DNA of 64,000 nt from Laetmonice hystrix (lineage: Eukaryota), in the NCBI GenBank assembly GCA_965235115.1, contig OZ249444.1, positions 9,548,001 to 9,612,000 of the forward strand. The letters run 5' to 3'. The position numbers and the translations under genes are program-made. This document shows positions 5,985 through 46,141 of this stretch, in pieces (the first letter of the stretch is position 1; each line of letters opens with the position of its first letter). The notes under the pieces are model-generated. The model was given only the letters and a program-made list of their open reading frames with translations. It searched no databases and had not been told where the DNA came from.

Positions 5985-6190
5985 AGTTTACCATGATGGT
6001 GTCAAATGCTTTACCCTCATCTACAAGCCCATGTTTTCCTCCCCTACTGGTCGTATGTTATAACCCATAAAAGTCCTGTTGAGTGCCAAGTCTGATTCGG
6101 ATTAAGTTAGTCATCGGTAGTCTTTTGTTAGAGCAGTTTCCATACCTACTTCTCGTTGATATGCGCTCCTTGTAATGATATTACGTCGGT
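5985..6190 (-). mobile_element. Decayed non-LTR retrotransposon (CR1/L2-like) reverse transcriptase fragment
   Basis: Manual minus-strand translation gives NIITRSAYQREVGMETALTK (cf. Q-S-A-Y-R..HSTETAL.K) and LVDEGKAFDTI (cf. LDLSKAFDTV), in the correct order, with stops or frameshifts between. Confidence 0.55.
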
Positions 6191-13649: not shown

Positions 13650-14560
13650 TCCCAAGCTGTGAATGCACACTGGGAATGTAGTCGGACCGTGAAGTGACTT
13701 GAGTTGAACCATGATGGTAACACAATCGCAGCGCGCTGTAATAGCCACCGACCCAGCACAAATAAAGTTGTCCAACTGTCATGCAATCATTGCCAATATT
13801 CACTGCTATTGTTGCACGTGTTGACGTAATCCAGTCATTCCAAATCATGATCTGCGGGTCTGATCTGAGACAATCTCGCAGTCCATTGTGCGCCCACACC
13901 AGGCGGGACAAAATGAGGGTTTCATTTGGCACCACTCCCCCTCCCTCTCACACTGACCTCTGGCCCACATTCTGGTGGTCCACATTCTGTCCCACCCTCA
14001 CAAAAATCGGACAGAAATCTTTGTATTCAACCATGTGTGATATCAGCAAGATAGAACTTACAAAATTAACCAACACTGAATAATTTATCATGTGACACGA
14101 AATTCATGATCTCCCATGTCTAAAGTATGTGGCAAAGGAAGTCCTGGTTCATGGTCACTAAGACCGAATATAATTAGGCAGGATTTGTTTCTATTTTCGG
14201 TTTTAATTATTTCAAAAGTGTATATTCTATGTTAACCTTAGAAATCAAAGCCTTTCAGTTTCAACTTCATAAAAGTATCTGTGATATTATGATTAATATC
14301 ACTTTTTAAAATCGTGTCAAATGTTGCATTCTTTCACTGAAGCTGTTTGACGGATATCCAGATTCCCTGTTTCTCGTAAATGACAGATAGGAATTTGTCA
14401 TGATTGTGATTTTAGAGCTGAAACAGGCCAGATTTGCATCATCCAGGCCAGCTCATGCAACTGTTTGAAACCAATGAATCTTTCATACCCGACTCGTGGG
14501 ACCCACCCAGAAATTCTTGTTGGTGAATACAAGTACACTGATACAGACAAATCATGTCGG
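13650..14560 (-). mobile_element. Highly decayed L2-like LINE ORF2 remnant
   Basis: Ordered motif echoes on the minus strand: ISVL (~14550), NATFDTI (~14320), ETLILSRL (~13910; cf. ALILSRLDY) and RSDYIPSVHSQL (~13670; cf. DHITPVL..LHW). Weak, by-eye match. Confidence 0.33.
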
Positions 14561-23500: not shown

Positions 23501-25179
23501 TTCAGTTAAGGCTGATTCTCATGCACTCTACCTATCTACTTACTGTTCGATCTCAATACTCATTAACTATGGAGTATGAATTATCTTTCTCTACACAATT
23601 TATCATTTACATTTCATGGCCACGGGAAAGACATGTTTACAAAAAGGTGAAAAAAAATTAAACAAGTATAATTTATTTAATGTATACCAGTAATACTGGT
23701 ACCAAGAAAAATTAAAACTGTATCGTATTATAACCTTGACACAAATACTTTTTCCCTGTTTACCATTCTAGTCTGACATTTTGCTTTTACTTCATGCATT
23801 TTCTAAGCTACGCCTATTACATGCTCCACAGACTTGCACATGTACAGAGACATATAAATATATATGTGTATGACAGAGACAGTGATTTCCAACCGTGCTA
23901 GATCATATCCGGCCACAAAGCATTACTATATCTTGCCTTCATACTGAACACTTTAAGCAGCCAAACGCTAAATGTACCCCAAACTATTGTACTGAACCAA
24001 AATAATCCATCAAAAATGTCAAGGTACCAGAAACTCTTTTATGTGTTAGTCTACTCTTTCAAGGTTCGTTTTTAAGTATGCTATTTCTACAAGTTCTGAA
24101 TAATAATTTTTGATTCAATTACACGCTATTCAAAGAAAAATAAATCATCTGAAGAATATTATGCCCCTAAATGGAATTATTCAATTTTTTTTCCAACGTC
24201 AACATGAGCCGAGGACAGATGTTGGAACGCTACCCGACTATCAGGTGATTCGTTTCAAATTGTATTATTGATGTGGGTTTCAACTCTCATTGTTCCAGTC
24301 AAGTTCTATGGTATCATTATTGTGAATGTGAGGACACGGTAAAATATGTCAGATAAACAGGCACGTGCAATAGAGAATATGCTGGTCCATTGAGTGTCCA
24401 TCGTGCCACGTGAATGGTATGAAATACTGGCTCCATCAACTTGTCCGAAGCTTCACCCCTCTGTCGTGGTGAAAACCACCTGGTGGTAGATTGTTAAACT
24501 AGGGCAAAAATACCGTCTCTCAATTAAAATAAAGTATGGACATTCTCAGTTAATCAATCATTGTCATTGGAAACTTACTTTTTACTTTTAAATATATAAT
24601 TCCAGCACTGCTGTCATTCTTACCTTTTTTTCAAAATTGTGGTAAATGGTACATTATACTAAATAATCAGTAATGAATATAAGAGTAGTCTAAATTCTGA
24701 TCGTGTTTGCATTAGCATGTATGTCATTAAATGGCTGCATTTCAGGATCTTGCTTTCCCAGTATTTTACAGACAGGTGTCCACTAAATAGAATGTACACC
24801 TTGTTTTGCTATACCACAGACAAAATCTACAATTATGAGAAGAAAAGAAAAGTAAAAACCACAAAAATTCACCCTACCATCTAAGCGAGTCCAGATGTTA
24901 GTTGTAAAAAAAAAAAGAAAATGCATGTTTTACGTCAGCATGAGTTAAGTGATGACTCAAAAGTAAATGCACGCAATATTGGCTGCAGTGGAATGGCAGA
25001 AATGGCTCCTTTGGCTCAAACCTGCACTGAACAAAGCAAATCAGTTATTGTCTTCTTTCAACTCTTAGTTCATGCAGCAAAAATCAACATATCAATATGC
25101 AGTCATATCAATGCCAAGTCGAGGCGCAACTCCTACTTTCACAGCGTATGTGCGGCCCTCAAAAATGCTTCTTAAACAT

Positions 25180-25308
25180 CTCATAACTAAACCAATTGTC
25201 AAATTAGGGACGATTCTCATGACCAAACTAAGATCGAAATTAGTGACAGTTCTCAGGACCAAGCTAAGTGTCACCTTAGAGACACAGCTCATAAGCAAGC
25301 TAAGCTGA
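25180..25308. repeat. Degenerate 36-bp tandem repeat x3.6
   Basis: Units begin CTCA at 25180, 25216, 25252 and 25288; plus-strand translation is LITKPIVKLGTI/LMTKLRSKLVTV/LRTKLSVTLETQ/LISKLS*. Confidence 0.75.
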
Positions 25309-26030
25309 CGGACTGTTCAACGTCGGAGCCTGTAAATCATGCATGACGGGTACAAAAAAAAGCATGAGTAATCATTTGCAATTTTCTGCCAACTGTTCTC
25401 GTAATTTTCTCGGTGAAGATAGCCTGCTAAGGGCTGCTTGGCCAGTTACAGACATAAACAAGCATCAATTGGGTAGTTTTGCAGACAAAATGAAACACAG
25501 GGACGTGATAAACGGTTTGTGTCAGGCAGTGCATCTGACAACTGTTCCACATCATTTCTGGAAGAAGCAACAGTTAGGGCACCGGCCGCCGGCACGGGCC
25601 TGGCGTCAGTCAGTCAGGGCAGGCGGACCATTGTCACCGACATGCTCACATACTAATATCATCTCACTAGGCCCCACAGACCCTGCACTAGATACAACAC
25701 ACAGTCTACAAGTTAAAAAATTCTAGGGCATAACCGACCAATCACATAGACAAGATAACTCACAAAACAAGGAACCGTTTACACTAGTCTACAAGATCTC
25801 TGATTCCAACACACACATATAAATAAATTCTCTTTGTATAAAAAAAAGGGGGGGGGGGTAGAAAGTGAATTAGATGACTCTCCCAAGGTTAACACTGAGC
25901 TTTGCAACTCAGGGGGGAAAATGGCTGTCCTCTTCCTAATGAACCAGTATTAACGGCGGAATTAATGAGATTAATGGGCACTGGGCAAAGCGCCCCTTGT
26001 TGATCCAACCAAACCAAGCGATCACTTCCT

Positions 26031-27296
26031 GCTAAACTAATCAATCACTTCCAGCCTGTTCCGCACCTCCTCCCAAGCTGAAGACTAGCGCATCACTTAC
26101 ACAAAAAAAACCAATGCTTCATTCCTGGTCTCTTCTCTCCGTCACCCGAGACTAACTTCAACTCCTCACTCCAGCCTAAACTAACCGATCACTTCCAGCC
26201 TGTTCCGCACCTCCTCCCAAGCTGAAGACTAGCGCATCACTTACACAAAAAAACCCAATGCTTCATTCCTGGTCTCTTCTCTCAGTCACCCGAGACTAAC
26301 TTCAACTCCTCACTCCAGCCTAAACTAACCGATCACTTCCAGCCTGTTCCGCACCTCCTCCCAAGCTGAAGACTAGCGCATCACTTACACAAAAAAAACC
26401 AATGCTTCATTCCTGGTCTCTTCTCTCCGCACCTCCTCCCAAGCTGAAGACTAGCGCATCACTTACACAAAAAAAACCAATGCTTCATTCCTGGTCTCTT
26501 CTCTCCGTCACCCGAGACTAACTTCAACTCCTCACTCCAGCCTAAACTAACCGATCACTTCCAGCCTGTTCCGCACCTCCTCCCAAGCTGAAGACTAGCG
26601 CATCACTTACACAAAAAAACCCAATGCTTCATTCCTGGTCTCTTCTCTCAGTCACCCGAGACTAACTTCAACTCCTCACTCCAGCCTAAACTAACCGATC
26701 ACTTCCAGCCTGTTCCGCACCTCCTCCCAAGCTGAAGACTAGCGCATCACTTACACAAAAAAAACCAATGCTTCATTCCTGGTCTCTTCTCTCCGCACCT
26801 CCTCCCAAGCTGAAGACTAGCGCATCACTTACACAAAAAAAAAACAATGCTTCATTCCTGGTCTCTTCTCTCAGTCACCCGAGACTAACTTCAACTCCTC
26901 ACTCCAGCCTAAACTAACCGATCACTTCCAGCCTGTTCCGCACCTCCTCCCAAGCTGAAGACTAGCGCATCACTTACACAAAAAAAACCAATGCTTCATT
27001 CCTGGTCTCTTCTCTCCGCACCTCCTCCCAAGCTGAAGACTAGCGCATCACTTACACAAAAAAACCCAATGCTTCATTCCTGGTCTCTTCTCTCAGTCAC
27101 CCGAGACTAACTTCAACTCCTCACTCCAGCCTAAACTAACCGATCACTTCCAGCCTGTTCCGCACCTCCTCCCAAGCTGAAGACTAGCGCATCACTTACA
27201 CCAAAAAAAACCAATGCTTCATTCCTGGTCTCTTCTCTCAGTCACCCGAGACTAACTTCAACTCCTCACTCCAGCCTAAACTAACCGATCACTTCC
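26031..27296. repeat. Composite minisatellite of two modules (A ~78 bp x10, B ~66 bp x7) with higher-order structure
   Basis: A (CCGCACCTCCTCCCAAGCTGAAGACTAGCGC...CTCTTCTCT) at 26061, 26205, 26349, 26427, 26571, 26715, 26793, 26938, 27016, 27160. B (C[CA]GTCACCCGAGACT...CAGCCTGTT) at 26139, 26283, 26505, 26649, 26872, 27094, 27239. Confidence 0.97.
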
Positions 27297-30200
27297 CGTT
27301 CTAGAGAAACAAACGTCTAATATACGGTCCGCGATCTGTGACGCAGCATTACAGGGTGCGGAACCTGTCGCCATGGCACATCTGACATGACCTTTTTATG
27401 GAGGCTTCATTATTACTGACACAGTATCCCGGGGGAGATAAAGTTTCCGCGCATACAAACAAGTCCATGTAAGCGAGGCTTGTAGGTGTGCCACACCGAT
27501 AACGCCTCTATTTATAGAACTCAGACACTAATTGTATTGCATGAGATGCCCACGAGCTAGTGCAATATACATAAATATATATACAGCTTGAGGCTATAAA
27601 AGTATTCTGAAGTGGGAATAAAACCCGATAGCTGTGGTAATGTTATCACAGCGACCACGTCTGTATGAATTTCTATCTATTTACCACGAGAAGAGCAACC
27701 AGAGCCCATAGCAACATAGATTCGTATCTTAATGCTTTCAAAATATTGCACTACAATTTTATATGTCACGAAGAGCTGCGGTCTATGTTGACAGAGATGT
27801 GCTGTGATTATATGATAAAATATTGATTGCCTGATCATTCAGTCACTGAGTTATTTGTCTCTGCCTCTAACCGTCCATCCAGTGATATTTGGAATCCGAG
27901 GGGTAGCTGTAAGCATTATCAAATATCCCAGGCCGATTCCCATGAGGGATATGTAACTCTACCAGACACAGGAATCGGGAATCTTTTTGATAAGTTGGAT
28001 ATCATCAAATACATTCACGACACCAACGCACTGGCAAGTCACATAAATCTACCTCCACATCTAGAAGATGATCAGTAAGCAGTCCATGTGTGTTATCAGT
28101 ATGGGAACCCCTGCCCCCCCCCCCAAAAAAAAGAAGTGCATTCCTGTTTGACAAATCATACCCCCGACCATGCCCGTCAGGTGGACTACTGCTGGCTGGC
28201 CACGGGGTTCCAAGAATCCCCTCCAGGGCCCGTGTCCTAGAAGTTTCACGTCACTGCCAGAGTTTGTTCTGCGCAATCTTATTGGCTAAACGGCAGGCGG
28301 TCCTCCAATCACAGATCTTGAGCGCAGCTTAAGTCAATTCTAAAAGTTCTAGTGTCGACCCCTAGAGAGTTGTCTGGCAGCTTGAGCAAATAGGTAGTGG
28401 GGGGTTGGGCGGTGGCTGGAATGGCCGAGGTCAGGGGGCACAAGTAGGGGCAGCATGTCAACAATGTTGTTGTTTTCCGAGTGGTTCATCCAATGTTGGG
28501 ATGACTCAGACGTACGCACTGTGACCTAATGACATAGTCAGGTAATACCTCACCAGTCCTCACCTCAGGTCACTGACTGTCCCACATTAATAATAAACCG
28601 CTCAGCCGACAGGCAGGATCCATCACTGACAATTCACTGGTTGACTGTGATGATTTTGTGAAGGAAACTTGTGGCTTCACTTTACTTCAATTCAAGCACT
28701 AGTTGCACCTGGACTCGTATCTTTGACCTGGTATCAAGGCTCCAAAGATAGAGACCCCCTTCACGGCAAGTCTGGCACCTTGTATTCATAAGAGCATGCT
28801 CGTAGATACCAACTCTTGGACTTTGGTCAGGTTAAATACCTGTACTGGTCGTGTACACAAGAAACGTGAGATTACTAGCTGATTGCCCGTGACCCACTAA
28901 AATAGGCAGACATGCCTCCTTAGCTTGTCGCGGCACGGATAGCGTGGCCTGAAGTTAAACCGGGAAGTTTGGGTCATAAAGTTGCGAGGGATACTTATAT
29001 GTCCTCATGTCCCCGCAATACAAAGGAATGACTCAGCTTTTGTCAGGAACCAGCGCTGATTATTACAACTCTTTCAACCGTAAGCGGTGAACATGATTCA
29101 GACTTGTACAGACTTTTCTGGTTCTGTCCTGGTCAGACTGTCCTTCAGTAAAAACCTGGAGTTCACTTTATATACTAGGTTTACCGGTTATGGCAGGGGA
29201 GTGACGGCCTTCAAAGAAGATTGGGGTTCTCTGTCCTTTACATAATCCTACCAGACATTTGCTTTCCATTGGACCTTTCAATTTGTACGCAGGTCCACGA
29301 TCCCTGCTTTTTGCCTGATTTTTTTTAGGCGTGGGTGTTTGGTAGAGAAAAAAAATATCAGTATGTGATTTGGCGGCGGAGGTTGAGTTGAGTCATCATA
29401 TTAGGGAGGGACTGGCAAAGCGCTGCTTACCAACTTGTTGCTTGTGTATACCAAGGCGGCCTTCCAGCGGCCCACCTACGCCGCCATCTTTGCTGAGTTT
29501 ACATAGTTTAATGTTAGCATAACGTTATAAAACCTGGTTAAACACAGAGGCCCACCCTCAGTCCGCCCCCACGTACAGACCGCCCCCCCCTCACTCCAGC
29601 CTGAGCCTCATAAAAGAGTTCTGAGAATGATTACTCGGAGGCGCCCTTCTAACTTCCCAGTTTCTGACAGTCGGCCGGTTGGATAGAGAAAAAACGAAGT
29701 TGGACGGATTCTTTTTTTAACTGGTTCATCCTCTTCTGGGCGTCGCTTGGCGGCTTTGTGGCGATGGCGTGGCAGCGGGTGAACTGTGGAGGGGAGGGGG
29801 GCGTGGAAGCCGGTTGGTTGACTGCGGCCGAGAACTTGTCAGATGTGAGCATCACTCAGGCCAGCTCTGCTACCCTTGTCAGCACGGCTAGATACCCCGT
29901 GGTCTAAACGCAAGTGTTCTGTCAACATGCCTGCCCCTCCGTCTGGAGGCGTCCAGGCCACAGCCGGTTGTCTCAGAAACTTCAGCTCAAGTCGCTGCTA
30001 TTCCTTTCGCTGTCCGGTTGGTTTTGAAATGTAACACTGTTGATAGGAACTCTCATAATCTGCCATGCACTTCCCATGTCAGACTGGGCATCTCAGACCT
30101 GTCAGGCCCTCACAGAGCTCGCCGCCCCAGCTGCCCCCACAGCCCCGTCAACAGCCGTGAAGCTTGACTTTACTTCTCAAGTCTATCTGAGAGAACTTTC

Positions 30201-33200
30201 TACTTGTAATCTTTTTGGCCTTTCCTGCAACACAATCTTCTCCTGCATTTTTTCTTGTAGTTGGAGGTGAAAATATTTGTGTTATACGACTTTGGGAACT
30301 ATAACAACAAACCCTTTTCTCATCATTTGAGTCCATATAGCCTTTCCAGTTTTTCCTACGATTTGGCTCCTGATGTTTTTTCTTCTTCTTCTTCTTATCC
30401 CCCCCCCCCCCCGCCCCCGCCACAGACGCGTCTCGGCTGTCTGCGCTGATGACATTACCGCCGGTAGCCACGTGGCTTCTGGAACCGCCGCACCGGGGCG
30501 CCACTGCCCAGGCACCACTGTGGCCTGCCTGGCTCAATTCTTGGCACTGCCCTGTAGCATATTAGGTGACAAGTCCCCAGAACAAAGGACTGTGAGATGA
30601 AAATAATCTGGCTAGGAAGTGTGGCACGTTTTGTGAGGGTGGTTCTGGTGTCGCCAACACGCCCTGAAAACATCTCTGACCGACAGTGTCTAATCTGGCC
30701 TAGAGATGGCGCTGTCGGCAGCCATTAGCCGACCATGAAGTCGTCACCCTCCACGCCGCACTGGCACTGCAGACCGAAATATACGATTCCGTCCCACTAA
30801 AACTGAAGTACAGACCCATGCCCTATCTCAGCCTCTCGTCTAATACACCTAGAACGCAGCTGCTCTGATTATCTGTACTCTTATCTGATTGGTTACATTT
30901 TATCTAGCCTGCCATCTGCTCAGTTGAATTGCTTCTTGGATCTAGGGCACCTTATCAAGGAATTGCCTTGTCCATCTCGTCCCCCGTCTTTGTTCGAAGC
31001 TTTGATCATACCAGTATTATACAGGAAATCTCTTTAATGTAAGTGGCACAATCTAAAGACTTGGTCTGCTCACGGTTGTTAGATTAGAAAATCCTATTTG
31101 GCCTTTCCGCCACTTCAATAGCACCTAGAATTTGTTAATTCAAATTTGTCCGCATTGAGCGTCATAATTAATTAACACGATCACGTTGATCCGTGTATGT
31201 ATTGAGTGTTGGTTTTCCTGTCCAATATTAGGTGTGAGAACCAATCGAAGACGGGTTGGGTAAAATGTCTGCCGTCCGGAGTTTGAACATCCTGACTTCA
31301 CGTCCTGGCCACCACCGACCGACCTCTCAACATTTTATGATGTCACTGTAACACAAACCGGACATTCCTGTGTTTAACTTTCTCATCCGCCTTACAATCC
31401 CTCTTTCAGCGGGTCTTCCTGAAATCGGATCCATGTTTACCCTATCATATTTAAAGGTTACTGTTACACGCTGTGCAAAGTCCTTGTCCCATTCCAAGCC
31501 ATCCTCCCCAGCCAAAATTCCCGCCTTTTGGTCCGTCAAGACTTAACAGTAGCTTTGTCTCGATTCAATGTCTCTGTCACCGAGTTTTTGTTGTGCGATT
31601 AGTTTTTACATGAAGTCAAAGGGACAGTAATTAGAAGTTGTTCATGTGTTATCACAAATACTACATTTTTTCCAAGCCTATTTCAGATTTCCACGCCACA
31701 TGATATTTTCTGCTCAGTGGATAATGGCAATGAAATTACATAATTTCGTAGTTCATGGCACACTCTGATCTAGAAAATAACCTGGGTTGTGACAAAAGTT
31801 TTGGAAATGACTATTCATCATAAATGCCACATTTGTTCAGTAAACAGACCATGTGATGTTAATGGACTGCACACTGAGCGAGCACTCCACGCTGCACTGA
31901 TCCACATGCGGTCAAATTGAAAATTACATCAAGATTCTGCAGTCGTTTTTATTTGACTTAACTCGTATAAGTAAACCTACACTACTAATCAGCATTAGAC
32001 AGCGCTGAAGACTGTATTCCACTGTGAGAGAGACCTCTCGCTCTTCTGTCCCAACTCGAAACAGGACCGACTCTGGACCAATGCCAGGCTGCAGCGGTTC
32101 GTCTGGAATCCCTCTGAGTGCTATATTGTTATGCTACAGCATACAACAGCCTGATTGACTGTGAATTCCCAGTTTGTGCCCCGTCTCAGCAAACTCATGT
32201 CCCAGCATAAATATTTGCAGACGAGCTCTCTCCTCGGCGGCAGAGATGGCCACTACCTCCATTACTTCAGAGGCCGTCATATGGTTAACCCTTTGGACGT
32301 TTAACATCAACCTCCTAATAAAATGATGTGGGATACAGGAGTTTTCTCACACCGTCACACGTTTCGTCACATCCTGGTGTCAGACAAGTGTCTATTGTGT
32401 CACCACTCCCCTTGAACGTGGGTGTAGACATGGGTGGAATCGTATGGAACACCCCACTATCAGGCCCCGATCGGGACCTTCTACTTCAATGCAAGATTAT
32501 GGACCATTTATACTAACCTTCTTTGAAACACTGAATCCCACTTACTACACTGACTACAAGAAACAAAGATCTGCACATTATAGATCACTCTCGGAGTAAA
32601 CGCTTCGGAAACACAATAGACGTTTGTGTAAAATCTCCGCTCACCCATCATTTTTTTTAAAACCTTTCCTTGAGGAAGAGTTGGGCGAGCTGAGCATGCG
32701 CTACCACTGTTCCCGCGGTACACGGTATCACCAACCGGAAGTCTACTGCCAACGTACCACACTCCGAAATTCTCGGGAGGAAAGCCTTCCCTGGCACCGT
32801 CACAAACACAAATGTGCACTTAAGGGAGTCTTACGGCGGCAAGCTTACATAAAGTAACACGAGCTCAGGGTATATGAAGGCTGTAGAAATGCGGACAGAA
32901 CAGGAACGGGGTCTGAAAGAACCACTCACTCCTAACCTTGCGGCCATGCAATTAACATTAAATAGCAATTAGTGCTTAAAACCCATATCGTGTAGGACTT
33001 CGATCAATTTTTCCATGAGCTGATGACTAAATAGTAAGGACTGTTGGCAAGTCGGCTCACAAGGCTTTCTCCCCTTCCGCACAAAACTGGAGGCAAAGTT
33101 CAAATTTGTGACAAGGAGAGGCTGGAGAATGAGAACGACTTTTGAGAGCAGATACAGGACATGAAACAACCAATGAACTTCGGAACTCTGCCATCGACTT

Positions 33201-36200
33201 CCTGACATGATAAACATGTTTTCTTTTAGATAGGAAGACACATCTTCAGGATGTCCTCGGTCGGTGTTCCAGTCAACACCAATAAGTGATCACAAGCTAG
33301 AGAATTTCCTTTTGAAGAAACAGCAGAAACCCTTTAAGATCAATGCAGAACTGCTGGTGCTCTGGTTTTTGACGATTTAAGCCAAACAGCTTGTACGACG
33401 TCTAGTCTGAGATTAATATTTATTTATGAAACTGAAGATTAATTTGCAGATTATGAGGGAAGTGGTCGCATGTATGGCAGTATCTAACGGCATAGTTAGC
33501 AAACTTAGATATACGTAATTCTGTGTTAAAAACGAAGCACAGTAAATCTTCTAGGCCTAGAGGTAACCTGATCATCTTACAAGTTTCTGTAGGCTGCGTT
33601 ACTGCAATCTAGTATAACCTAACTACTGCATTTACAATAAATAACATGCTCTACTGTTAATCACAGGCAGATATTTTCTTAATTAGGATTTCCAAATTGC
33701 TTTGAATTAAAAGATATTAGGGAGTTAGTTATATCTAGGGAGGCTTTTAATTCGAAACACTCTCTTTGCGAGACACGAGACGGTTTTCTCGTCAGAGCTC
33801 CTCAGACTCTGCTAATGCCTACTCCTTCAGCACTTGCCGATAATGTCGAGACAATTAAACAATACTGCAATGAATGCCACCAACTCTGAAATGTCACGGC
33901 GGGCCGATGTTGTCCATCGGTCGGACCCCATGGAAACTCTGAATATATTCTGTCTCATGACAGATCCACATAGGATGACAAGGCCGTTACCGTTCACACC
34001 CACAGTGCAGTAAAGATTTTACCCATTGTCGCCCGTACTCGGCCCAGATCCTCGGCTCAAGGCCCCCATCACCATGAGGGTTGTATCAACTGACATTTAA
34101 AGTGGTTAGCGCAGCAATCAGGAGGCCTCCTTGAGCCGGACTGGTTGGGAGTGTGTCATTGTGCTCGCCCGCATCATGACATAATAACACCCCGCAGCAT
34201 ACTCTCATCGCTGGATTACCACGCCAGGGTCGGTGATTAGGGTCTGCTGGTACCTTTCTATAGATGATCGTACCCGAGTCATCATCAAATAATCACTTAA
34301 TCCCTGGCTGTCCTGGGCTTTCCAACCCTCCCAGGCCGCAACGGTAGAATCTTCAACGGGAACGGGTTGAAATATGAAATATGGAGCGAAGGGTCTTTCT
34401 AACCGATGGCTGAAACCGATGTGATGAGTACTCTTAACTGCACCTGATCCCGAAACGGTTGTAATTTGAAGAACGGAACCCACCCTATATGCTTCTGGGA
34501 ATCTTGACCTCGGCTCAGGTTAACCTTTAATGAAATTACTTGCGAACATTCACAACTGCTCCCTTTGCTGGTATTATATCTGACAATTGTATGATTATCT
34601 CTAATCGTAATCCATTCCGCTTCAAGGCTACATAATCGTCAAACAACTGTATTAAATGAATGAATTTATTTATCTATTTCTCTGTTAAATTCCAATCGAC
34701 TTTTACTTACAGCTCTACAGACGGAAAGGATAGCTGGTAATATTCACATTCTAAGCCAATGGTCGACTTTCCAAAACCTATTAGACTCCATGTAGTTTTA
34801 GCGAGCCATTAATTTTCCCCCTTTTCTTCCTCAAGGCTCTCCTTTTTTTTGTTCTTGCGCTTCAAGCAACAACTTTTTATGGACAACAGAAACTGTAGAC
34901 TGCTGCTAGACTTCTATCAGTTAACAACTTCTTGTGTTTCTTGTCTGCTTTTTATCCCTTATCGGAACATTCCGATTTTTGGTTACATTTTCCTTGGATC
35001 TGATGACAACTCGGGAGTCGTTTGACCTACTCAATGTGGTTCCGTCACAACCCTAGCCCCCTCCCCCACCGGCCAGCCTTCACCCCACCCTCAAGTCATC
35101 ACCCTGCCTACCGTCCTCTCTCACCCTGATTCTCATATCTTTTCTCCAGGGTCTTGTTTGCCAGCTGTTTAGCATTCTTTTCCCACTTTCCCTGGCTTCC
35201 TGAAATTGATCTCCAGCAGTTGCCTTATCTTTTTTTCCGAAGAGAGAGACACACAGAATGAAAAAGCGCGAGTTGTTTTTAGAAGCAGGCACTTTTTTGA
35301 GACAGAAACTTGGGGCCGAGGGAACTTCAAAGACGATCTTCGAAGACTGTTGCCGTCCAGAAACTATTTGGCCCAAATATTCCTACGTGGAGTTAGCATT
35401 TTGTAAGATAATCCCGCATCCCTTCACGCAATGCTTGCCATATTCAGGCTGGCTGGGCAGACACAGAGGAACAGGTCGGGTTTCCGCTCAGTCTCTCAGT
35501 GAACCATAACTACGGTCTGTGGAGCTTCTCGTTCCTCAATACGAGACCGTCCTGTCATGACATACGACAATCTGACATCTTTCCAACCTCAGGGCATGGG
35601 GCTCATTTTTCATCTTTTTAACCCTATACAGCTGCAACTCACTCAGGGGGCGGTAATAGGTACGCAACACATGTACGGAAGTTACGTGCAGATAAAAAGT
35701 TATACCACGGATGGATGGGAGGATGGGGAGAAGCAGTTGTGGTTTACTCTGAAAAATTGCCTTTGTTTGAATCAAGTAGACAGACAGCCAACCACATGGT
35801 GTGCCACGCTGCCCCTATCTTGGGCTATATCCGTCATTTCTAATGGTTTTACTTAGCTGTCAACCAGTAGGTCAGGTAATGAGAGACAACTTCAGGTGGA
35901 AACGTTTCTGTTTCACACCTTGGACAGCTTCACAATATATTGCATGAATCCATGAAATTTGTAAGGTTAAAAGTGGCGGCTGAGGCCGAATCAACATTAT
36001 GGGGTTGCTCAATCTTTTATCATCCGATGCGTTATACAAAAGGCAGTTATCCTATCTTTGACATATGGCTGCGTGCTTCTGCAGTGCATACCATTGGACT
36101 TTTTCCTATTTCTGTCACATGACGCGATTTGCTTTAACTGCCTAGTGACAGAACCTGTTAAATTCTCCCGACACCTTCTTGATGGTGAAGCTGAACGAAA

Positions 36201-39200
36201 GACAATCTATTCGCGTAGTCTGCAGCACGCAGCTTTAGACACCCACTCCGAGTTGGATGGTGGCGGCCGTTCTAATAATATTCACCCAAGGCAGGTATTT
36301 CCGCCGACAAAAGGATCGGATGACCCCAGCCTGCACAATGTTAATCGACATCATTAACGGTTAGGGCTTGTCACTTTCCGCCATCTTTTTGCTAACAGCC
36401 TTGGTTGGCGTTGGATGGGCGCGCCGGGGACGTCTCATCTGTATTCTGGGACCGTTTCCTGGGAAACTCTATTTGCGCGCGAAACGTCTCTCTGCAAACA
36501 CCTATTCCGCTGGGCAAACGAAGGCGTTCTGCTAGTCATTACGTACGAATACGTCGTTGGCGTTTTCAACCAGGCAGTCTGTGTGGCTAGAACACAGGCG
36601 TGTCGCTGCCTGGGCCAACTCCATGTCAGAAACTGTAAGGTCAACGGCGGCCATTCCTCACGTTTATGGTGACCGTGGCACGGCCACTATTTTACCATCA
36701 AACATTCGCACTGCTGTCTCAAAATCAACCGGTCTAATCAACTGTCTGTCCCGGCAAACACACCAGCAAACATCCCTTCTACCTCCTCGCTCGGCTTTAT
36801 TTGTCTGGTCATACTCTATTGCTTTTTCCAACAAGTACTACTATTTTATCATGTCCTACCAAAGTAAATACTCTGATATAAATGTCCAGATTAATAAGTC
36901 ATTAGTGTGTCTGATCAGACGTACGAATATCGCTGTCTCCTGAGGACTAAAGTCGGATCATTTTCGTCCTTCCTTGCGACACAAAGTTTCAAATCCACAT
37001 CCACAGAATTTCAGTATTATTTCAAATGGAAACTCCCAGCATGGTGATCATGTTTCAAAGCTGGAATTCCTCACTCAATACCTGGGTCCGAAGGCAGGGG
37101 TTCTTTTGTCGGATCTATACTATCCGCGCAAGGAACAAAGTGTGCATCGGGCCTGGATGACATCAAATGAACATCTGAAATTCAGTCAGCCAGGCCGACT
37201 GTTGAAACAGAACTCATTTCAGATTCCGACCCGTATCTTACAAACACGTCCCCCAGACAATCAGACAACATGGTTGGAGGGTGAACAGGTTGGTTCCCCC
37301 CACCCCCCCCCCCCTCCCCGTCCTACCCGTCACCGACAACCCTCGTTTCGCAGCCAATAACCTGGCGTCAATTCCTGTTCGCTCCTTATTGATCGCTGAT
37401 CGCCAGCTGCCAGACAAGGGTGCTAGACCTTGAGTCTGTACGCCCAGCCTCTTGGGCACGTTATTAAATATAAATCAGAGGCTCCAGTCGTTTTTTCTCA
37501 CCATTCCCTTGACCCCATCACCGTGGCCCCCTGTGCATCCAATCCCAGGGGATCATCAAAGATTTGATAGACCCATCAAGGCCACCTCGTGTGGAGACAT
37601 CAATGGAGAGACAAAATGTCAGGAGGGAGAAAAATTTTGTGGCTTCTTCTCCCATATCTACGGAGTCACAAATCTATTTCCCAGTCGTGACAAAGAAGTC
37701 TAGCTTTTTTCCTTCCTCAATTTTGGATTATTCAACTAGAAGGGGTTAAAAAACAGAATCATATTTTGCCACGGCTGATGTGCAGACTGTTATTTTGCTG
37801 ATGACTCATGACATTTTGTGAATCACACATGTTAGTTGCTCATTTCGAGTTGTCATATACAAAGGGTGTTTGTCACAAAAATGTTTCAATTATTAAATCT
37901 GGAATCAGTTATCACATTTCGAATCGGGAATAACACAATTTTATTGATTAGTGAAAGAATTTTTTTATTCGACACATCAGAGATATCTACGGGGCCATGC
38001 TTGCCGTTCGACAATATCATACCAAATTGCCACTTCCTTCGGTTGAGGAAAATATCATGATTACACTGCTGTGGTCGCAATACACCAGTATCCTACCGGT
38101 AAGATGCGAGGTACAAGAACTAGTGTTCAAGGCATGTCCAAGGTATTGCTCAGAGAAAGACCAAGATCGACTAGACCTGATATTGTGCTATAGATACACT
38201 TCTCTTCGGAACTGTCAATTTGTGTTGCCTCCCCAGGACTGGGACGCGCCGCCTGACTCTTCCTGTTATGCCCATTACACCAAACTAGGTCTCACCCCCT
38301 ACAAATCATTGATGCCTTGGCCTCTTCTCCTTCACAGCTGTGGTCCCAATACAGGAAACGTAAAACTGAGCCTTGGAACAAACAGGAGGCAGCATCTCAA
38401 GACGAGGCAGCTCCAGCCGGGCCCTCGCTGATGGACATGTTGACTCAAAGTGTCTTGCCATTAATTTTGCAGCTGACTGGGACAAACCTGTACAGCTCAG
38501 CCAGTGGAAGCGTTGTGAGTTCTTCACTCCAGTTTGCTGCCAGTGTTGAAGCGGTTGTGCTGACTGTACGCACAGCTGTGCTAACACAAATCATCCAATC
38601 GCCCTCGTACAATTTCCACTCCACTTTTGCCACTAAAACAGGTACTTTTAAAGAATACCCGACTTATGCCGTAACAACACAGGGAGTAAGTATTCTCCAG
38701 TCTTTTATCTGAACTTGGTCGAACATGACTAATCAATGGCGCACGTTTCATTAACAAATTCAATCCTGACTAAAACTCCATGCAGCCCGGCCACCACTGT
38801 CTTGGGAGTCTAGGATTCTGGACTTTATCCTCTGAACACTCCGACTGAAAGCTTGGGGAATCCCCATCATCAAACAGGGTGGGGGCGCTCACGGATTAAT
38901 GATGTCAGCGTGTCATTATTTACTGCCTTCTCTCCATTCCAATAAGCCGCGAGGGTTCATACGAATGAGGTCAGACGATAGCCATTGGGGCCGGGGTGAC
39001 GGTGTGGGCGGAAGGTTGGTTAGACCTTCCAGAAAGACATAACTCACTCCACCCCATCAGTTCCACTAACCGTCATCAAGACCATTTCTGATGTTTCCAA
39101 TGTTACTTTTTCTTCATAAAGAATACGGCAGTTCCTGCCGCTGCTGCTCAACACATGGTATCGTTTAAATCAGTAAAAAGTAACTGCATAATTAATGTGT

Positions 39201-40717
39201 GCATTTGTGTTTGGTAGGATGGCTGCAGAGTGTTTACTCAGCCTCAGCATAATCATTGCCAGAGCCGCAATAAGCTAGTTTTTTTTCGGGCAGAGCCCCC
39301 CCCCCCTCCTTCTCCTCAGAAATATTTGTCCCATGAGGTATAGCCATCATGTTTTATATTCATATCTGCTTTGTGTACGTTAAGGCGAAGCGGAAAAGAT
39401 AATCTAGATCTTGTTCATCTGCGTATACGAAAACCACATCTTGTGGTTTATCACCCGTCGCCTGCCTCCTATCTACCCCTCAGGGAACCACTCACAATGC
39501 AAACACCCTTGGTTTACGACCAAATTAATAAGTCGATCAAGATTTCTAATGGTCCCACCCTCCTTCAAGCCTCTAGACGGAGGCTGGGGGGGGGGGGGGG
39601 GCTCCTTGTTCCCATGGCAACGCCAGAAACATATTGCACATGAAGTGCTCCCCAAACATTAAAAATAATACAGCTGATTCGATAACAATAGCGCATCTTT
39701 CGACCTGCTGGTTTCTGCTGGCCGGGCAGCCGCCCGCCGTCCTGGGGGATGTCAATGGAGTTGCAGGGACGGTTTGTTTACTCACTGCCTGCCCACTTTA
39801 TCTGGCCAACAAAGCCTAGCTCACGACATGGCGGAAAGGACACGAGTTGCTTTTTATGCTTCGGTTATTTCCACGCCGGTGACGGCCAGCCTGCCTAATG
39901 GACCTTGTCTAGACGCGGCCTGATATGAATCATGGAAATTATGCCACCACATTTTGGACCAATCATCGGTAGTCACCTGTCCCGCCTGACTCACCCCCCC
40001 CCCCCCAATATACTGATCTTACCACTAGTCTACAGCTATCACTTGAAGCATGAAGTGTCTTACCAAGACAGTTTCTGTTATAAAACTTAATTACTTTTTT
40101 ATTTTACAAAAGTCACGAGACGCTCTTTAGATGAGACTCTCTTATCCATCACATTTACAAAGTCAGATAATTCCGAGCACATCCCCTGCACGTAGAGTTA
40201 AATGCAGATACATAAAATCAATTACGCACACACATTCTAATTACCATGTTTCACACTGTTTAATCAAATGCTCATAAAATAAAGACCGGAATAAAAGAAC
40301 TTGTAGGTGTTTGTCATGTGCTTACTGTCCTATAACGACCAGTATCTCATCCAAATATCAATATCTCACAGTGTAAGAATCAATACTTTCCCTCCTCTAT
40401 CATTTTCAAGTGATCTCCCTATCCTGACAGGATATGAATCAAGCCTTTCTTTTTAATTACCGTGGCCTAAATTACCAGCAATACAATTCCCATGTCTGGT
40501 CCCCTGGGTCATGTGATTTTGTAGTAGGCTGTTGGTATGCGGCCAGGCAAGGCTGGCACATTCAAGCTTTGCTGCACTGGTGTACTAGCAAAAAGTTCAC
40601 CCAGTACCACAGGCACTGGGCATGAGCCGCCCACTTGGAAACACCTAATTAAATAATTGAATAATCTTTAATGACTCAAGCGAGGGATATAGCAGGATGG
40701 ACGTGTGGAGGTTTTCT

Positions 40718-40740
40718 CTGTCTGTCTGTCTGTCTGTCTG
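40718..40740. repeat. (TCTG)n microsatellite, about 5 copies
   Basis: tctgtctgtctgtctgtctgtctg read directly. Confidence 0.85.
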
Positions 40741-41849
40741 GGTGGGTGGCTGTGAGAAGGAGGCGATACTCCCCGACCTGGTGACTAGACCTGAGGTCCG
40801 AGCCTACCAGTCGTACGACCCCCACCCACCCTAACTGTACCCCCACCCCCTCGCTCCCGCCGACTCACACACACAGACCAGCCAGTACGGTATCTAGTCT
40901 CCCCGGGATCTTCTCTCCTCAAGATGTTTGACGTACCACTGAATCATGTAAACGGGAGATGGAGATACCAGCCCACCTCCCCCCGCCATGCGCTATTCTC
41001 ATTTCTAGGAGATCGATTCGGGACCCGTGCCAGTTTAAGGATGGGTCACCGGCAATTTGGTAACAATTACCGCTGACGTATCACACAGAGTGGGTGTGGC
41101 CACATCGGTCACAGCCACCAAGTTTGACACAATGAGTCGGCATTTTCGGACACACCGACACACAGACAGACAGGCCGGTTGACTGCCTGGCGTTGTCAGC
41201 GCCCTCTCCCGGGCTGGTAATCATGTTATGTTTAGAATAAAATGACCAGGCCTCATGAGAGGTCTCATTTCAAAGTCCTGATCGATTTGTCCCTATGTTA
41301 TACAGGCGGCGGTCAAAATAGAAATTGGTTGCAGATGTGCGCTTATCTGGCCGTAATTGATTTCCATGGGCATGCTATCCGTCTGCCCTTAGAGCTCGGG
41401 CCGTGCACCCATGGGGCGAAACTCGACGGCCAGCCGGTATATGTACACTCAATCCTATGTCGGCTCCAGGGAAATGGCACACTTGTCTGTACAAAACAGC
41501 AACAGTGAACAATCAACCTAGTTATACCATCCACTATTGGAAAACGTGTATAGGAAAAACCTTCTGTCTGTGAAGTCCATATAGGCCAACCCTCTAGCAC
41601 ACGTTGATCATGGCTTGGACAATGTATGACATCCCGCGGCATTCTGTGTGTGAGACAGACGTGGCACGGTTCGATTGAACACCACAAACTGCTCGTCACA
41701 ATGTGTCACTGACGTGTTCGATTTGTGCAAGGTTTTCCCGGAATGATGGCCACACAGGAATGTGCCCAATGAAACGGCAATAAACGAAAAAGAAATTAGC
41801 GAATCATTGTCTTTAAAAATGTCAACCAATTATTGCACTGCTCTATTTA

Positions 41850-42130
41850 ACCGCCCATGTGTTATTTTCTTTCATAAACCATAAAATACCATAAAATAAA
41901 AGCTGAGCCCAAAGGGGAATTCTCACGATTAATATATTTTTCCACCGAGGTACTAACTGTTTCATCAAGAACTGTCCCTGAGCAGAATAAGTCTTTATTT
42001 CATTCTCTGACCATATCAGCAGGCAACAGTTAGCACTTGACAGATTATTGATGGAGACAGTGTTGACACACAGACAGTAACCGCCATCTGTCTTACTATT
42101 TGCCCTGCCACCTAGCACCAACTCGCCGCA
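41850..42130 (-). mobile_element. Decayed Ty3/Gypsy reverse transcriptase fragment
   Basis: ORF 41843-42121 contains KTDGGYCLCVNTVSINN (cf. K.DG.YR.CVDYRKLN) and LVPRWK..IVRIPL (cf. F.TP.G...RMPFG). Confidence 0.4.
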
Positions 42131-43427
42131 CTAGCAGCCTAGTTGTTAATGGGGGTGAAAGTCCACCGACACACCTGAGTATCCAATCCCCAAGTACCAA
42201 TTATTTCTTATTACTCTTCTCCTATAATCAATCACCATGAAATACCCTAAGGTCTCAGGGCGCTAAATATCACTCTTACTCGGCGGCTAACAAAGAACAC
42301 TCTCCTTTATAAAAAGACCATGGAATCATTAACAGTTCCCGAATTTTCCACTTCGATGTTTCATCCTACGATAACGTCTGAAGACTACTCATTCCGTTGA
42401 AACACTTGACGACATGGTGTTATGCCACAATACAATTATCTATCATATACAACCAAATATATATCACACCTACTATATATGATAAAATACCCGTACACCA
42501 ATGGCTTCATTCACCTTACCACTGACCACCAAAAATCTCTACTATTTACATATAGTAATACAAATATATAAATATACAAATATTCACACAGAACTGATAT
42601 TTCAACCAAACGGGGTGACCTACATCAGCATTCAATGAGTGGTCCTAAATGTCCGATCCTATCAGTCACTGAGTTTAAACATGATCCGCACGGTAACACT
42701 AAAACTAACACGGGCCAACCAACACTGATGATGCAAATCAATTCACACACACAATTCAAGCCTTCAGCCTCAGACGTTTCCCAAAAAGATGCAATAACGA
42801 AATAATTAATTTTCTCCTTCCAGACATTTTTGGTAGTCTGATGCGGCCGGAGTAGAATCCACCATAAAGGAGCAATTTCCTGGTGCGTCCAGGCAGTTAA
42901 AGTCATGATGATTTGTGTGGTAGAGTTGACTTTTCATGTTTAACAGTTACAAGATTGTGCGTGTGACTTTGCAAATGCTACTTTTTCACATCTGAGATGC
43001 TCATTTCTCGTTGGAAAGGAAGAGGAAAGATCTGGGCTTTAAGATATATTCATTATAATATCATTTCAATATTTTATCTTTTCGACATGCCGGAAATAGA
43101 TCCGGTTAATCTTTGTACTCAACAGGAACTAAGGATCAAGTAATAAGGAAATAGGTCGCAAGATTCAGCGACTCTTAAACTTGAGTAAGAACTGAACTTT
43201 TCAAAAACCCGTCTTGGGCTAGAGTTCTGAAAACGAAGCCCTGCCCCATTCCGCTTCTTCGAATCCAGGTGCAAAGTCACACATACAACCTGACCAAACT
43301 GATGCAACCGCCACCTAGGTGAAAATACCGGTAACGTAACGGACAACACATCTTGTTTTAACGCACACAAATCGAAAAAAAAATTAAGTAAATAAATAAA
43401 TTACGATTTACTCGTATGAACACTGAC

Positions 43428-43616
43428 CTTTATAGAGTCGAAGCAGCAGGTTACCCTGCCATTCTGCACTTCTACGTGGGGCGGTGGGTGTGCAAATTTG
43501 CACTCTGTTTCTGATCGTGTGCACTTGTTGCGTTGAAACTCGCGGCATACTTCCAACGTAAGCCATCGGGAGTCCTTGACCTGCAGGGGGGGTAGGATTG
43601 AGCCGACCATGGCCAT
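43428..43616 (-). CDS. mbl: Muscleblind (MBNL family) first coding exon, 63 aa: CCCH zinc finger 1 plus start of finger 2
   Basis: Translates [63 protein letters not shown], the hallmark Mbl/MBNL N-terminus (W-L-x-L-E-V-C-R-E-F; C-x7-C-x6-C-x3-H). It ends at donor AAG|GTCAGT in phase 0, the conserved MBNL intron position. Confidence 0.97.
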
Positions 43617-44045
43617 AATATATGACTCAGGACCTCTTGCGAAGTGGTTCCGATTGAAAACAAAAACAAAAGATGAAGATGAAGATGTCTATCACAGCCC
43701 GTGCTGATCTCCTCTGTAGCAGAGAGTGGGTCACAAGCTGAAGAGAACGATTCCCATTCGTGGACAAGACTCTACTGATGGATAGACCGTCGCACGCCTG
43801 TCTAAAGGCATATGACTGGAGGACCGTGCAAAACTCTACAAGAGTACGTCACAAATGTGCTTCCAAACGTGGAATTCCTTCGTTGTATGTCGTATGTAAA
43901 TTGCAATAGTAATAAAAATCCACTTCTAAACGTATAATGTTTTTTGTCATAAAAATATAATGTCTCTCTGTGTTGGTTTCGGAAGGCTTGCGTCAAGGAC
44001 TTGTGCTCCTTCTGGTGTTAGAACCATGCAATTCCTTTAAGTTTC
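43617..44045 (-). other. mbl: Probable 5'UTR portion (429 nt) of the mbl ATG exon
   Basis: Strong acceptor ...tctcttgttttctttcatgtctttccag|GAAAC at 44046/44045 with candidate branch points. A long UTR ahead of the ATG in this exon is typical of fly mbl and human MBNL1. A weaker alternative AG lies near 43636. Confidence 0.6.
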
Positions 44046-45604
44046 CTGGAAAGACATGAAAGAAAACAAGAGACATGAGCGAAATACCAAAATCAGCAAG
44101 AAGAAGAACCTTACATTCAATGGATGAATAGTTAACTTCACATTAAATCAAACTGCACATGCTCCACAAATTTCCAAAACAAATTACATGTACTAATAAC
44201 GACTCCGCCATATATCATGTCATGATGTTATGGTTATGACCCTCAAGGTGAGTTTAGCCGCCAGGGTATGACAGCCAGCTGTGACTGAGAATACACATTC
44301 CCATTCAAATGATCAGCGACAGCCATTAAAGTTGCGACATGCTTGCGTAATGAGGGCACGAGTCAAGATGGCACTTGAGCCTCTGGCCCAGCGTCTACTG
44401 TCTGTAGACCGACCGGCCGGCACAGCCCCTCCCTGCCTGGCGACCCTAACACACTATAGCATCCCCCCTAACACCTCTACCTCACGCAACCGTCTCCATC
44501 ACAATTATTAGCAACCCATAGCCATCGGATGAAAAGGCTATAAGAAAAAAAGAAAAAATGGCGGGCAGATTCAAGGATGTGCCCCTGCCGTTTATTTCCC
44601 ACTTCCCAATAAAACAGCATGACCGTGGAAGTTCACAAATTCAATCATTTCTAATTTTTTTTCACTGCAAACTTAAATCTACTTTTCCCCCTCCACCCAA
44701 ACACTACCAGGCTGACATCACATGACGCCATGCGTCCCACTCCATGAGGCGGGTCTACATGAGGCGGGGGCGGCGGTAGGGAGTGGAACGAGACCGACCA
44801 GGCCACTTGTAACACAATATGTTCATTCTCACTCCAACTCCGCCAAATTTTAGGTCACAAAACTGTGGGAAACTTCATGGCCGAGGTTCATCCCGCTACC
44901 CTATACCCTCTACCCTACTGACCCCACCCCCTTCATCTGTTTGTCAGAGCTCCATGCATTTTCATAGGGTGTCAATTTAGAGATGGCCTCACATGTACAG
45001 CATTCTGGTTCTTAGGTCCTCAGGCTTAAATATAGTACAGGACTGTTGGGAGTTGACAGAAAAAAGGTGGTTGCATGTGTTGAGCATGTGTTTAAATAAG
45101 GTTGGTTGCTGGGATGTTTGAACGTTCGAGTATTTCTAGAACCCGTGTATAACCAGCCTCATGGTAACCGTTATAATTCTCTACTTCTAGATGGAATATA
45201 TATGTCGGTCCTTGGTAAAAATGATGAAATCCAAGAAATATTTCTATTTTGTTTGTTCAGCAGTACTGCTCCCTTACCTTCGAACAGATGTGTCAAGAAA
45301 TGCTTGGATTTTCTTATAACTGTCACTCACACTACAGAATGAAACGTCTAAAATAAAACCTAACGTCGATATCTTAGAGTTGGGATAGAAACATGATTAA
45401 TGATGATAATTTTACGGTTATCTTTTCCCTAATTACAAGGGATTTCATGTTACACCAAACAATTAATTTGTAATCCTGGTCTAGATTTGTCGTTGTGTTA
45501 TAATCGTCATAAGCTTTGGCTTCACATTCTATAATTACTAACTCCTCATTAATATCCTTCAACCCAATGTCAGGCGGATTTACTGTCCCCAAATCAGCCC
45601 AGCC

Positions 45605-46040: not shown

Positions 46041-46124
46041 GATTTAATTACAGACTGTCCCGTAATTCATGGAATTCCTTTCACACAATCGGCCGAGTCA
46101 CTGATCGGCCACTGGGCCAGTCTC

Positions 46125-46141
46125 TGACCTACACCTGACCC
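46125..46141 (-). promoter_or_regulatory. DR5 nuclear-receptor element (RARE consensus)
   Basis: Minus strand GGGTCA-GGTGT-AGGTCA. Confidence 0.25.

What the first reader, a model, noticed from the sequence alone, without database searches (positions are those of the whole stretch)
43428..44045. Predicted translatable circMbl exon: 618-nt ATG exon whose back-splice gives a stop two codons past the junction
Seen: strong acceptor at 44045, donor at 43428, exon length 618 nt (a multiple of 3), a 40-kb downstream intron and probably a multi-kb upstream intron. Joining donor to acceptor gives ...ATA AAG|GAA ACT TAA, a 65-aa peptide (63 aa + ET*) with one intact CCCH finger. Known: the orthologous ATG exon forms circMbl in Drosophila and circMBNL1 in human, and fly mbl circles can be translated from the host start codon to a stop after the junction. 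Inference: the same circRNA/micro-protein system may exist in this lineage.
Basis: partly seen in the sequence, partly recalled or inferred. Interest (0 to 1): 0.75.

Follow-up and report, generated by a model that had tools for sequence, protein, structure and literature searches.

The report
Muscleblind start exon with back-splice RNA
This is the start-codon exon of the animal's only muscleblind gene. The one RNA data set available contains a contig joining the exon's end to its own beginning, so the circular RNA known from flies and humans probably exists in this spiralian-like invertebrate too; whether it makes a small protein is untested.

Summary
On the minus strand, 44045..43428 is a 618-nt exon with a 429-nt 5'UTR and 63 codons of muscleblind zinc finger 1.

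One of four public runs (X2) behaves as RNA. Its contigs cover only 43427-44047. They join the exon to the next coding exon at 2970, across a 40,457-nt intron, and to two alternative upstream exons at acceptor 44045.

A 57-nt X2 contig reads the last 29 exon bases straight into the first 28. The junction sequence is absent from the window and from the whole genome assembly, and the exon is single-copy.

A single-exon circMbl/circMBNL1-type circular RNA is therefore likely (about 0.7). It rests on one contig, from one run of unknown library type, with no RNase R test.

The 65-aa reading frame (host ATG, then ...DSIK-ET-stop) exists, but a stop that early has about 9% chance probability. Its conservation could not be tested, because the relatives available align only in the coding part. 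Translation remains speculation.

Neither inverted repeats nor YGCY (MBL-site) clusters flank the exon, so how it circularises is open.

Verdict: a new member of a known kind. The scan holds no separate finding of this on other DNA.

The parts
43428..44045 (-). 618-nt second (first coding) exon of the muscleblind gene; the unit that is back-spliced
   Evidence: Sequence. X2 RNA-like contig record 9 covers 43427-44047.
44046..44075 (-). 3' splice site: pyrimidine-rich tract ending ttccag
   Evidence: Sequence. X2 records 12-14 join two different upstream exons here.
43617..44045 (-). 429-nt 5'UTR part of the exon, 58% A+U, with four upstream ATGs (44027, 43950, 43811, 43757) that open short ORFs
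43428..43616 (-). 63 codons from the host ATG: MBNL/Mbl N-terminus with zinc finger 1 and the first Cys of finger 2
   Evidence: Translation. PDB MBNL1 5u6h E=4e-25. Pfam PF22628.
44037..44045 (-). First nine exon bases, GAA ACT TAA. After a back-splice they are read in frame as Glu-Thr-stop (stop at 44039-44037).
43419..43427 (-). 5' splice site, AAG|gtcagtgtt
   Evidence: Sequence. X2 record 11 joins 43428 to exon 2. 104 of 120 short homologues read on from DSIK into V (a GT donor), so the donor position is conserved.
2971..43427 (-). Downstream intron, 40,457 nt
   Evidence: The X2 loose end at 43427 equals window 2940-2969; acceptor ttttcag|GGCAAATG.
2803..2970 (-). Next coding exon (168 nt, 56 codons: the rest of zinc finger 2 and a linker)
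43646..43695 (-). U-rich, G-poor patch 30-80 nt upstream of the ATG, with no AUG in between; a possible ribosome landing site (inference only)
   Evidence: model from bioRxiv 10.1101/2025.10.31.685782
43886..43965 (-). Second AU-rich (about 80%), G-poor patch, predicted to be the least paired part of the UTR in the circular fold

Best explanation
The stretch is the ATG-containing second exon of the genome's single muscleblind (mbl/MBNL) gene. In linear mRNA it is joined to one of at least two alternative 5' exons, and to the next coding exon 40.4 kb downstream. Shown at contig level: in the same RNA sample the exon's donor (43428) is also joined to its own acceptor (44045). Inferred: this head-to-tail joint marks a 618-nt single-exon circular RNA made by the spliceosome, the positional orthologue of fly circMbl and human/mouse circMBNL1. 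Inferred: by analogy with the fly, back-splicing competes with linear splicing and so takes part of the mbl pre-mRNA away from protein production. The circle carries a 65-aa frame from the host ATG to a TAA seven bases after the junction. Whether ribosomes use that frame is unknown, and I rate it unlikely to be a major product. What drives circularisation is not visible in the sequence: there is no intron pairing and no MBL-site cluster. The very long flanking introns are the only recognisable predisposing feature.
For: Identity of the exon: PDB MBNL1/2 E=4e-25 to 2e-24, aligned up to ...CFDSLK; Pfam zf-CCCH_10; 370 homologues, among them named muscleblind proteins. The exon is single-copy in the 627-Mb assembly, and the ZnF3/4 exon of the same gene lies 64 kb further down the same contig. 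X2 is RNA: its contigs cover only 43427-44047 within 6 kb, whereas X1, X3 and X4 cover everything, and its loose end at 43427 equals the exon at 2940-2969. Back-splice: X2 record 10 (57 nt, k-mer depth 36) has letters 1-30 on 43456..43427 and letters 31-57 on 44044..44018 with no mismatch. That equals exon end plus exon start, and none of its 31-mers occurs in window DNA. Its length is what a k=31 junction unitig should have: 30+30 minus the 3 letters AGG shared by both sides. A 40-mer across the junction is absent from the whole genome at up to 3 mismatches. DNA contigs show one copy of the exon, at the depth of its neighbours. For comparison only, the linear junction contigs have depths 75 (to exon 2) and 60 and 43 (from the upstream exons), which is the same order of magnitude. 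Literature: circMbl comes from mbl exon 2 in flies and from MBNL1/2 in mammals, shows up even in poly(A) libraries, and mbl has alternative 5' exons (PMC9352392).
Against: There is only one contig from one run of one sample, and the library type is not on record. The tool's own joints table lists none, because each side of the contig is under its 31-letter rule; a k=31 junction unitig can never meet that rule. There are no raw reads and no RNase R or poly(A)-minus comparison, so trans-splicing or exon repetition is not excluded. The strand convention of the table for '-' records had to be inferred. The other reading would be a non-canonical CA...CA internal deletion whose ends happen to coincide with the exon ends, which I reject. 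No reverse-complementary matches link the 20 kb upstream to the 40 kb downstream, and YGCY is not enriched in the exon or next to it. The features that drive circularisation in mammals and flies were therefore not found.
Confidence: 0.7

Rival explanations
1. Ordinary first coding exon only. The 57-nt junction contig is an artefact: reverse-transcriptase template switching, a chimeric de Bruijn path, or my misreading of the table's strand convention.
For: There is one short contig, below the tool's own bridging rule, and table 5 lists no joints. The junction has 3 letters of microhomology (AGG). The library type is unknown.
Against: The joint falls exactly on the two splice sites that the linear contigs use. 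K-mer depth 36 is of the same order as the linear junctions. The unitig geometry (30+30-3=57, anchored on the ends of the 621-nt exon unitig) is what a real branch at both exon ends produces. The other strand reading gives a non-canonical internal deletion while the exon unitig stays unbroken.
Confidence: 0.15
2. The head-to-tail joint comes from linear RNA: trans-splicing between two mbl pre-mRNAs, or exon repetition, rather than a circle.
For: Contigs cannot tell a circle from a tandem exon repeat in RNA. Junction signal in what may be a poly(A) library would fit a linear carrier.
Against: In flies the same junction is RNase R-resistant and is still seen in poly(A)-based libraries (PMC5387669; PMC9352392). 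Exon repetition by trans-splicing is rare (my own knowledge). There is no genomic duplication.
Confidence: 0.08
3. One reading: the circle is translated from the host ATG into a 65-aa one-finger micro-protein (..DSIKET) with a function of its own.
For: The frame exists. The ATG has A at -3 and G at +4. AU-rich, G-poor and weakly paired UTR patches resemble those proposed as 43S landing sites on fly circMbl (bioRxiv 10.1101/2025.10.31.685782). Fly circMbl shows a junction-specific stop-codon footprint (PMC5387669).
Against: There are no ribosome or peptide data here. The early stop is expected by chance about 9% of the time, and every frame stops within 17 codons. Four upstream AUGs lie in the UTR. 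The peptide ends inside zinc finger 2 and keeps only finger 1 of a tandem pair. Conservation of the stop could not be tested. Even in flies the translation output is described as low.
Confidence: 0.12

Closest known systems
Drosophila circMbl (mbl exon 2 circRNA; Ashwal-Fluss 2014, as cited in PMC9352392; Pamudurti 2017, PMC5387669)
   Same: The host gene is orthologous. The circularised unit is the second exon, carrying the 5'UTR, the host ATG and zinc finger 1, and ending at ..DSIK. The gene has alternative 5' exons and very long flanking introns. The circle-specific frame ends at a stop in 5'UTR-derived sequence shortly after the junction.
   Different: Fly flanking introns and the fly circle carry MBL binding sites that drive autoregulated back-splicing; simple YGCY counts show no such clusters here. 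Fly evidence includes RNase R, Northern blots, ribosome footprints and knock-downs; here there is one junction contig. The UTR sequences are unrelated.
Human and mouse circMBNL1/circMBNL2
   Same: It is the same exon by position: the protein aligns up to ..CFDSLK, with ZnF1 75-80% identical.
   Different: Mammalian exon circularisation is commonly helped by inverted repeats in the flanking introns (my own knowledge; PMC9352392 introduction). No reverse-complementary matches longer than 18-25 nt of low-complexity sequence link the two sides here.
Ribo-circRNAs (circRNAs that share the host start codon; PMC5387669)
   Same: The build is 5'UTR plus CDS, with the host ATG and a stop created only by the back-splice and lying close to the junction.
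   Different: Ribosome association has not been examined, and conservation of the stop codon could not be tested.

Membership tests
circMbl / circMBNL1 orthologue | The host gene is a muscleblind/MBNL orthologue | tested here: met
   PDB MBNL1/2 E=4e-25; Pfam zf-CCCH_10; named muscleblind homologues; single locus in the genome
circMbl / circMBNL1 orthologue | The unit is the second, ATG-containing exon (5'UTR + ZnF1) that ends at CFDS(I/L)K | tested here: met
   At least two upstream exons join at 44045. The donor after DSIK is conserved in 104 of 120 homologues.
circMbl / circMBNL1 orthologue | RNA carries a head-to-tail junction at the exon's own splice sites that is not encoded in DNA | tested here: met
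   X2 record 10, 57 nt, exact; absent from the window and the genome. Caveat: one contig, one run, below the tool's own bridging rule.
circMbl / circMBNL1 orthologue | The molecule is covalently closed (RNase R-resistant, no poly(A)) | not testable with these tools
   Only assembled contigs of one run were available.
circMbl / circMBNL1 orthologue | Long flanking introns | tested here: met
   Downstream 40,457 nt. Upstream at least 4.95 kb; its far end was not found.
MBL-autoregulated back-splicing (fly mechanism) | Clusters of MBL sites (YGCY) in the flanking introns and in the circle | tested here: not met
   Exon: 6 against a mean of 7.1. Upstream 1 kb: 18 against 11.5+-4.6 (top 10%). Downstream 1 kb: 4 (bottom 4%). 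These are crude motif counts only.
Inverted-repeat-driven circRNA (mammalian type) | Reverse-complementary sequences in the two flanking introns | tested here: not met
   blastn of 20 kb upstream against 40 kb downstream: nothing at E<=1e-5, and only 18-25-nt low-complexity matches at E<=50, as many direct as inverted
Translated circRNA (ribo-circRNA) | The frame starts at the host ATG and ends at a stop that only the back-splice brings into frame | tested here: met
   65 aa, stop at 44039-44037; not beyond chance
Translated circRNA (ribo-circRNA) | Junction-spanning ribosome footprints or a junction-encoded peptide | not testable with these tools
   No such data are within reach.
Translated circRNA (ribo-circRNA) | The post-junction stop is conserved in related species | tested here: inconclusive
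   The nearest available relatives (L001-L003) align only over the CDS at 74-78% nucleotide identity. The UTR and the acceptor do not align.

The most novel reading that the evidence does not exclude
Circularisation of the muscleblind ATG exon, together with a circle-specific one-finger micro-protein, goes back to the last common ancestor of flies, vertebrates and spiralians. In this lineage it works without the MBL-site clusters or intron pairing that are thought to drive it elsewhere, which would point to an unrecognised, older determinant of back-splicing at this exon.
Probability: 0.1. Interest if true: 0.8.

Novelty: new member of a known kind. Interest (0 to 1): 0.5.

Why it matters
circMbl/circMBNL1 is the textbook case of a conserved, abundant circular RNA that may be translated, but it is documented in flies and mammals. 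Full-text searches of the held library found no paper reporting an mbl circle in molluscs or annelids. A back-splice junction at the same exon in a spiralian-like invertebrate would place circularisation of this exon in all three great bilaterian branches. It would then argue that the circle is maintained rather than a splicing error. Because this locus lacks both known drivers (intron pairing, MBL-site clusters), it would be a clean system for asking what makes this exon circularise. The micro-protein idea gets a concrete, testable target: a C-terminus ..CCFDSIKET.

Tried and rejected
1. Mapping the two upstream exons. The 30-nt loose-end consensus at 44048 blends two unrelated records (agreement 0.62, T-poor). 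It matches nothing in the window at up to 6 substitutions, nor in the genome at up to 3 mismatches. The length of the upstream intron therefore stays open.

2. Conservation of the acceptor and the post-junction stop. The contigs of the best relatives (L001, L002, L003) align only in the coding part. One further relative had no DNA served.

3. Back-splice-derived ORFs in other species. Among 120 short homologues, the tails after DSIK are intron read-through (V) or annotated alternative exons; none is recognisable as a junction product.

4. Inverted repeats across the exon: none.

5. YGCY enrichment: none.

6. Genomic origin of the junction (tandem exon duplication or a retrocopy of the circle): rejected.

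7. Reading record 10 as an internal 561-nt deletion: rejected. The ends would be non-canonical, the exon unitig is unbroken, and the ends coincide with the exon ends.

8. Taxon. My searches give only a spiralian-like signal: the best named matches are oyster (81%) and a land snail (88% over part of the exon), and the unnamed matches reach 86-96%. 'Probable annelid' comes from another agent's unchecked note.

Not done: a structure prediction of the 63-aa piece, which would not bear on circularity or translation.

Full report
**The observation**

Read on the minus strand, the window shows a pyrimidine-rich tract ending ttccag, followed by GAAACTTAAAGG from 44045. It shows ...GACTCTATAAAG followed by gtcagtg after 43428. 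The exon is 618 nt.

The ATG at 43616 has A at -3 and G at +4. It opens 63 codons that end exactly at the donor. Joining the exon end to the exon start gives AAG|GAA ACT TAA. This is a 65-aa frame ending DSIKET, with the stop at 44039-44037.

**What the exon is**

The 63 residues match the N-terminus of human MBNL1 and MBNL2 in the PDB (E=4e-25 to 2e-24). The alignment runs up to ...CFDSLK, the end of the query. Pfam finds one CCCH finger at residues 23-51.

A search of the large protein collection returned 370 homologues, including named muscleblind proteins of insects, crustaceans, an oyster (81%) and a land snail. The best matches are unnamed, at 86-96%. In 104 of the 120 retrieved sequences the frame reads on from DSIK into V, that is, into a GT donor. 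The exon boundary is therefore conserved.

The next coding exon (GKCQRKDPPCKYLHPPQHL..., the rest of finger 2) lies at 2970..2803 on the same strand. In the 627-Mb assembly the ATG exon is single-copy. The ZnF3/4 exon of the same gene lies about 64 kb further downstream on the same contig.

Another agent's note calls this genome a probable annelid. My own hits say only that it is spiralian-like.

**RNA evidence**

I laid them on 43001-49000.

X1, X3 and X4 cover the whole stretch, as DNA does. X2 covers only 43427-44047 (record 9, 621 nt) plus an 84-nt piece of a repeat, so X2 is RNA.

- **Link to exon 2:** the X2 loose end at 43427 is identical to window 2940-2969. The exon is therefore spliced to 2970, across a 40,457-nt intron.
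- **Upstream exons:** two X2 contigs (243 and 160 nt) share 44019-44048 and then diverge into unrelated sequence. At least two alternative upstream exons, both ending CAG, are joined at acceptor 44045. No linear contig uses another acceptor.
- **Upstream intron:** no further X2 exon lies up to 49000, so this intron is at least about 4.95 kb.

**The back-splice contig**

X2 record 10 is 57 nt long, with k-mer depth 36. Its letters 1-30 lie on 43456..43427 and its letters 31-57 on 44044..44018, both on the minus strand, without a mismatch. Rebuilt from the window, this string is the last 29 exon bases, the shared G, and the next 27 bases of the exon start. It occurs in exon+exon but none of its 31-mers occurs in window DNA.

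The length is what a k=31 junction unitig must have when the graph branches at both exon ends: 30+30 minus the three letters AGG that fit either side. The same three letters explain why the exon unitig runs from 43427 to 44047.

The tool's joints table lists nothing. Its rule asks for 31 letters on each side, which such a unitig can never have. I say this openly, because the claim rests on table 8 and on my reconstruction.

If the '-' record were numbered the other way round, the contig would describe a 561-nt internal deletion. That deletion would have non-canonical CA...CA ends, its contig ends would happen to coincide with the exon ends, and the exon unitig would have to stay unbroken. I reject that reading.

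A 40-mer across the junction is absent from the whole assembly at up to 3 mismatches. The DNA contigs show one exon copy at the depth of its neighbours. The joint is therefore made at the RNA level.

The depths of the linear junction contigs are 75, 60 and 43, the same order as 36. The tool warns against reading more into contig depths.

**Circle or not**

An exact donor-to-own-acceptor joint is the signature of a single-exon circular RNA. Contigs cannot exclude trans-splicing or exon repetition, and the library type is not on record.

In flies the same junction is RNase R-resistant (PMC5387669) and is seen strongly even in poly(A)-based libraries. There too mbl has alternative 5' exons (PMC9352392). 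I put a true circle at about 0.7 overall.

**How it might form**

I compared the 19,955 nt upstream with the 40,457-nt downstream intron. There was no match at E<=1e-5. At E<=50 there were only 18-25-nt low-complexity matches, as many direct as inverted.

YGCY, the MBL/MBNL core motif, is not enriched:

| Region | YGCY count | Comparison |
|---|---|---|
| Exon | 6 | mean 7.1 for bins of this size |
| 300 nt on either side | not enriched | |
| Upstream 1 kb | 18 | 11.5±4.6, top 10% |
| Downstream 1 kb | 4 | among the poorest in the window |

Neither the mammalian-type driver nor the fly-type driver is visible. Only the long flanking introns remain as a known correlate. The competition between back-splicing and linear splicing is inferred from the fly work, not shown here.

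**Translation**

The frame exists, but the case for translation is weak.

- A stop within three codons has about 9% chance probability given the UTR's own stop-triplet frequency. The other two frames stop at codons 9 and 17. The length being a multiple of three is irrelevant once a stop is in frame.
- The UTR has four upstream ATGs.
- The UTR also has two AU-rich, G-poor, weakly paired patches, at 43965-43886 and 43695-43646. The second lies just upstream of the ATG with no AUG between. This fits the landing-then-scanning model proposed for fly circMbl (bioRxiv 10.1101/2025.10.31.685782), but it is a resemblance, not a test.
- The product would keep finger 1 only, out of a tandem finger pair.
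- Conservation of the stop could not be tested. The three relatives' contigs I could fetch align only over the CDS at 74-78% identity.

**Comparison and novelty**

By host gene, exon position, exon content, donor position, alternative 5' exons, long introns and junction, this is the positional orthologue of fly circMbl and mammalian circMBNL1. It differs in lacking recognisable MBL-site clusters and intron pairing.

The held literature calls circMbl conserved from flies to humans. Full-text searches found no report of an mbl circle in molluscs or annelids.

I class it as a new member of a known kind, of moderate interest. The circular RNA is likely. The micro-protein is unproven.

Noticed in passing
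window 45581-46040: A minisatellite of 8.5 copies of a 54-nt unit (96% matches) lies 1.5-2 kb upstream of the acceptor, in the upstream intron. Each unit carries a small internal inverted repeat (ACTGTCC...GGACAGT). DNA contig depth there is 5-6 times that of the flanks, so the family is repeated elsewhere or the array is longer in the sample. The RNA-like run has one 84-nt contig on it at low depth. No inverted copy lies in the downstream intron.
   Followed up: partly
window 43793 and 43515: At 43793 (in the 5'UTR), C>T is seen in all four runs, including the RNA-like one. At 43515, T>C is seen in X3 and X4 only; it is the third position of Arg codon 34 (CGA>CGG) and so synonymous. The runs, filed as one sample, carry different alleles across the region.
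   Followed up: partly
proteins P0057-P0118, tails: NCBI annotates many short muscleblind isoforms (about 80-110 aa) in bees, ants and wasps. They stop soon after ..CYDSIK with varied tails. Linear transcripts encoding a one-finger MBL may therefore exist in insects, which bears on whether a one-finger product needs a circle at all.
   Followed up: no
window 2660-2690, minus strand: A run of about 20 C lies in the intron just downstream of the second coding exon.
   Followed up: no
window 57008-57199: Another first-stage note (s1-311085) reports a cluster of clock/hormone-type transcription-factor sites here, upstream of mbl. I did not examine it, and the positions of the mbl 5' exons and promoters remain unknown.
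   Followed up: no
whole genome (notes of other agents): Several follow-up notes on this genome state that no RNA data exist. Run X2 behaves as RNA at this locus and could be used to test those other findings (recursive splice sites, the ZNF608/609 exon).
   Followed up: no
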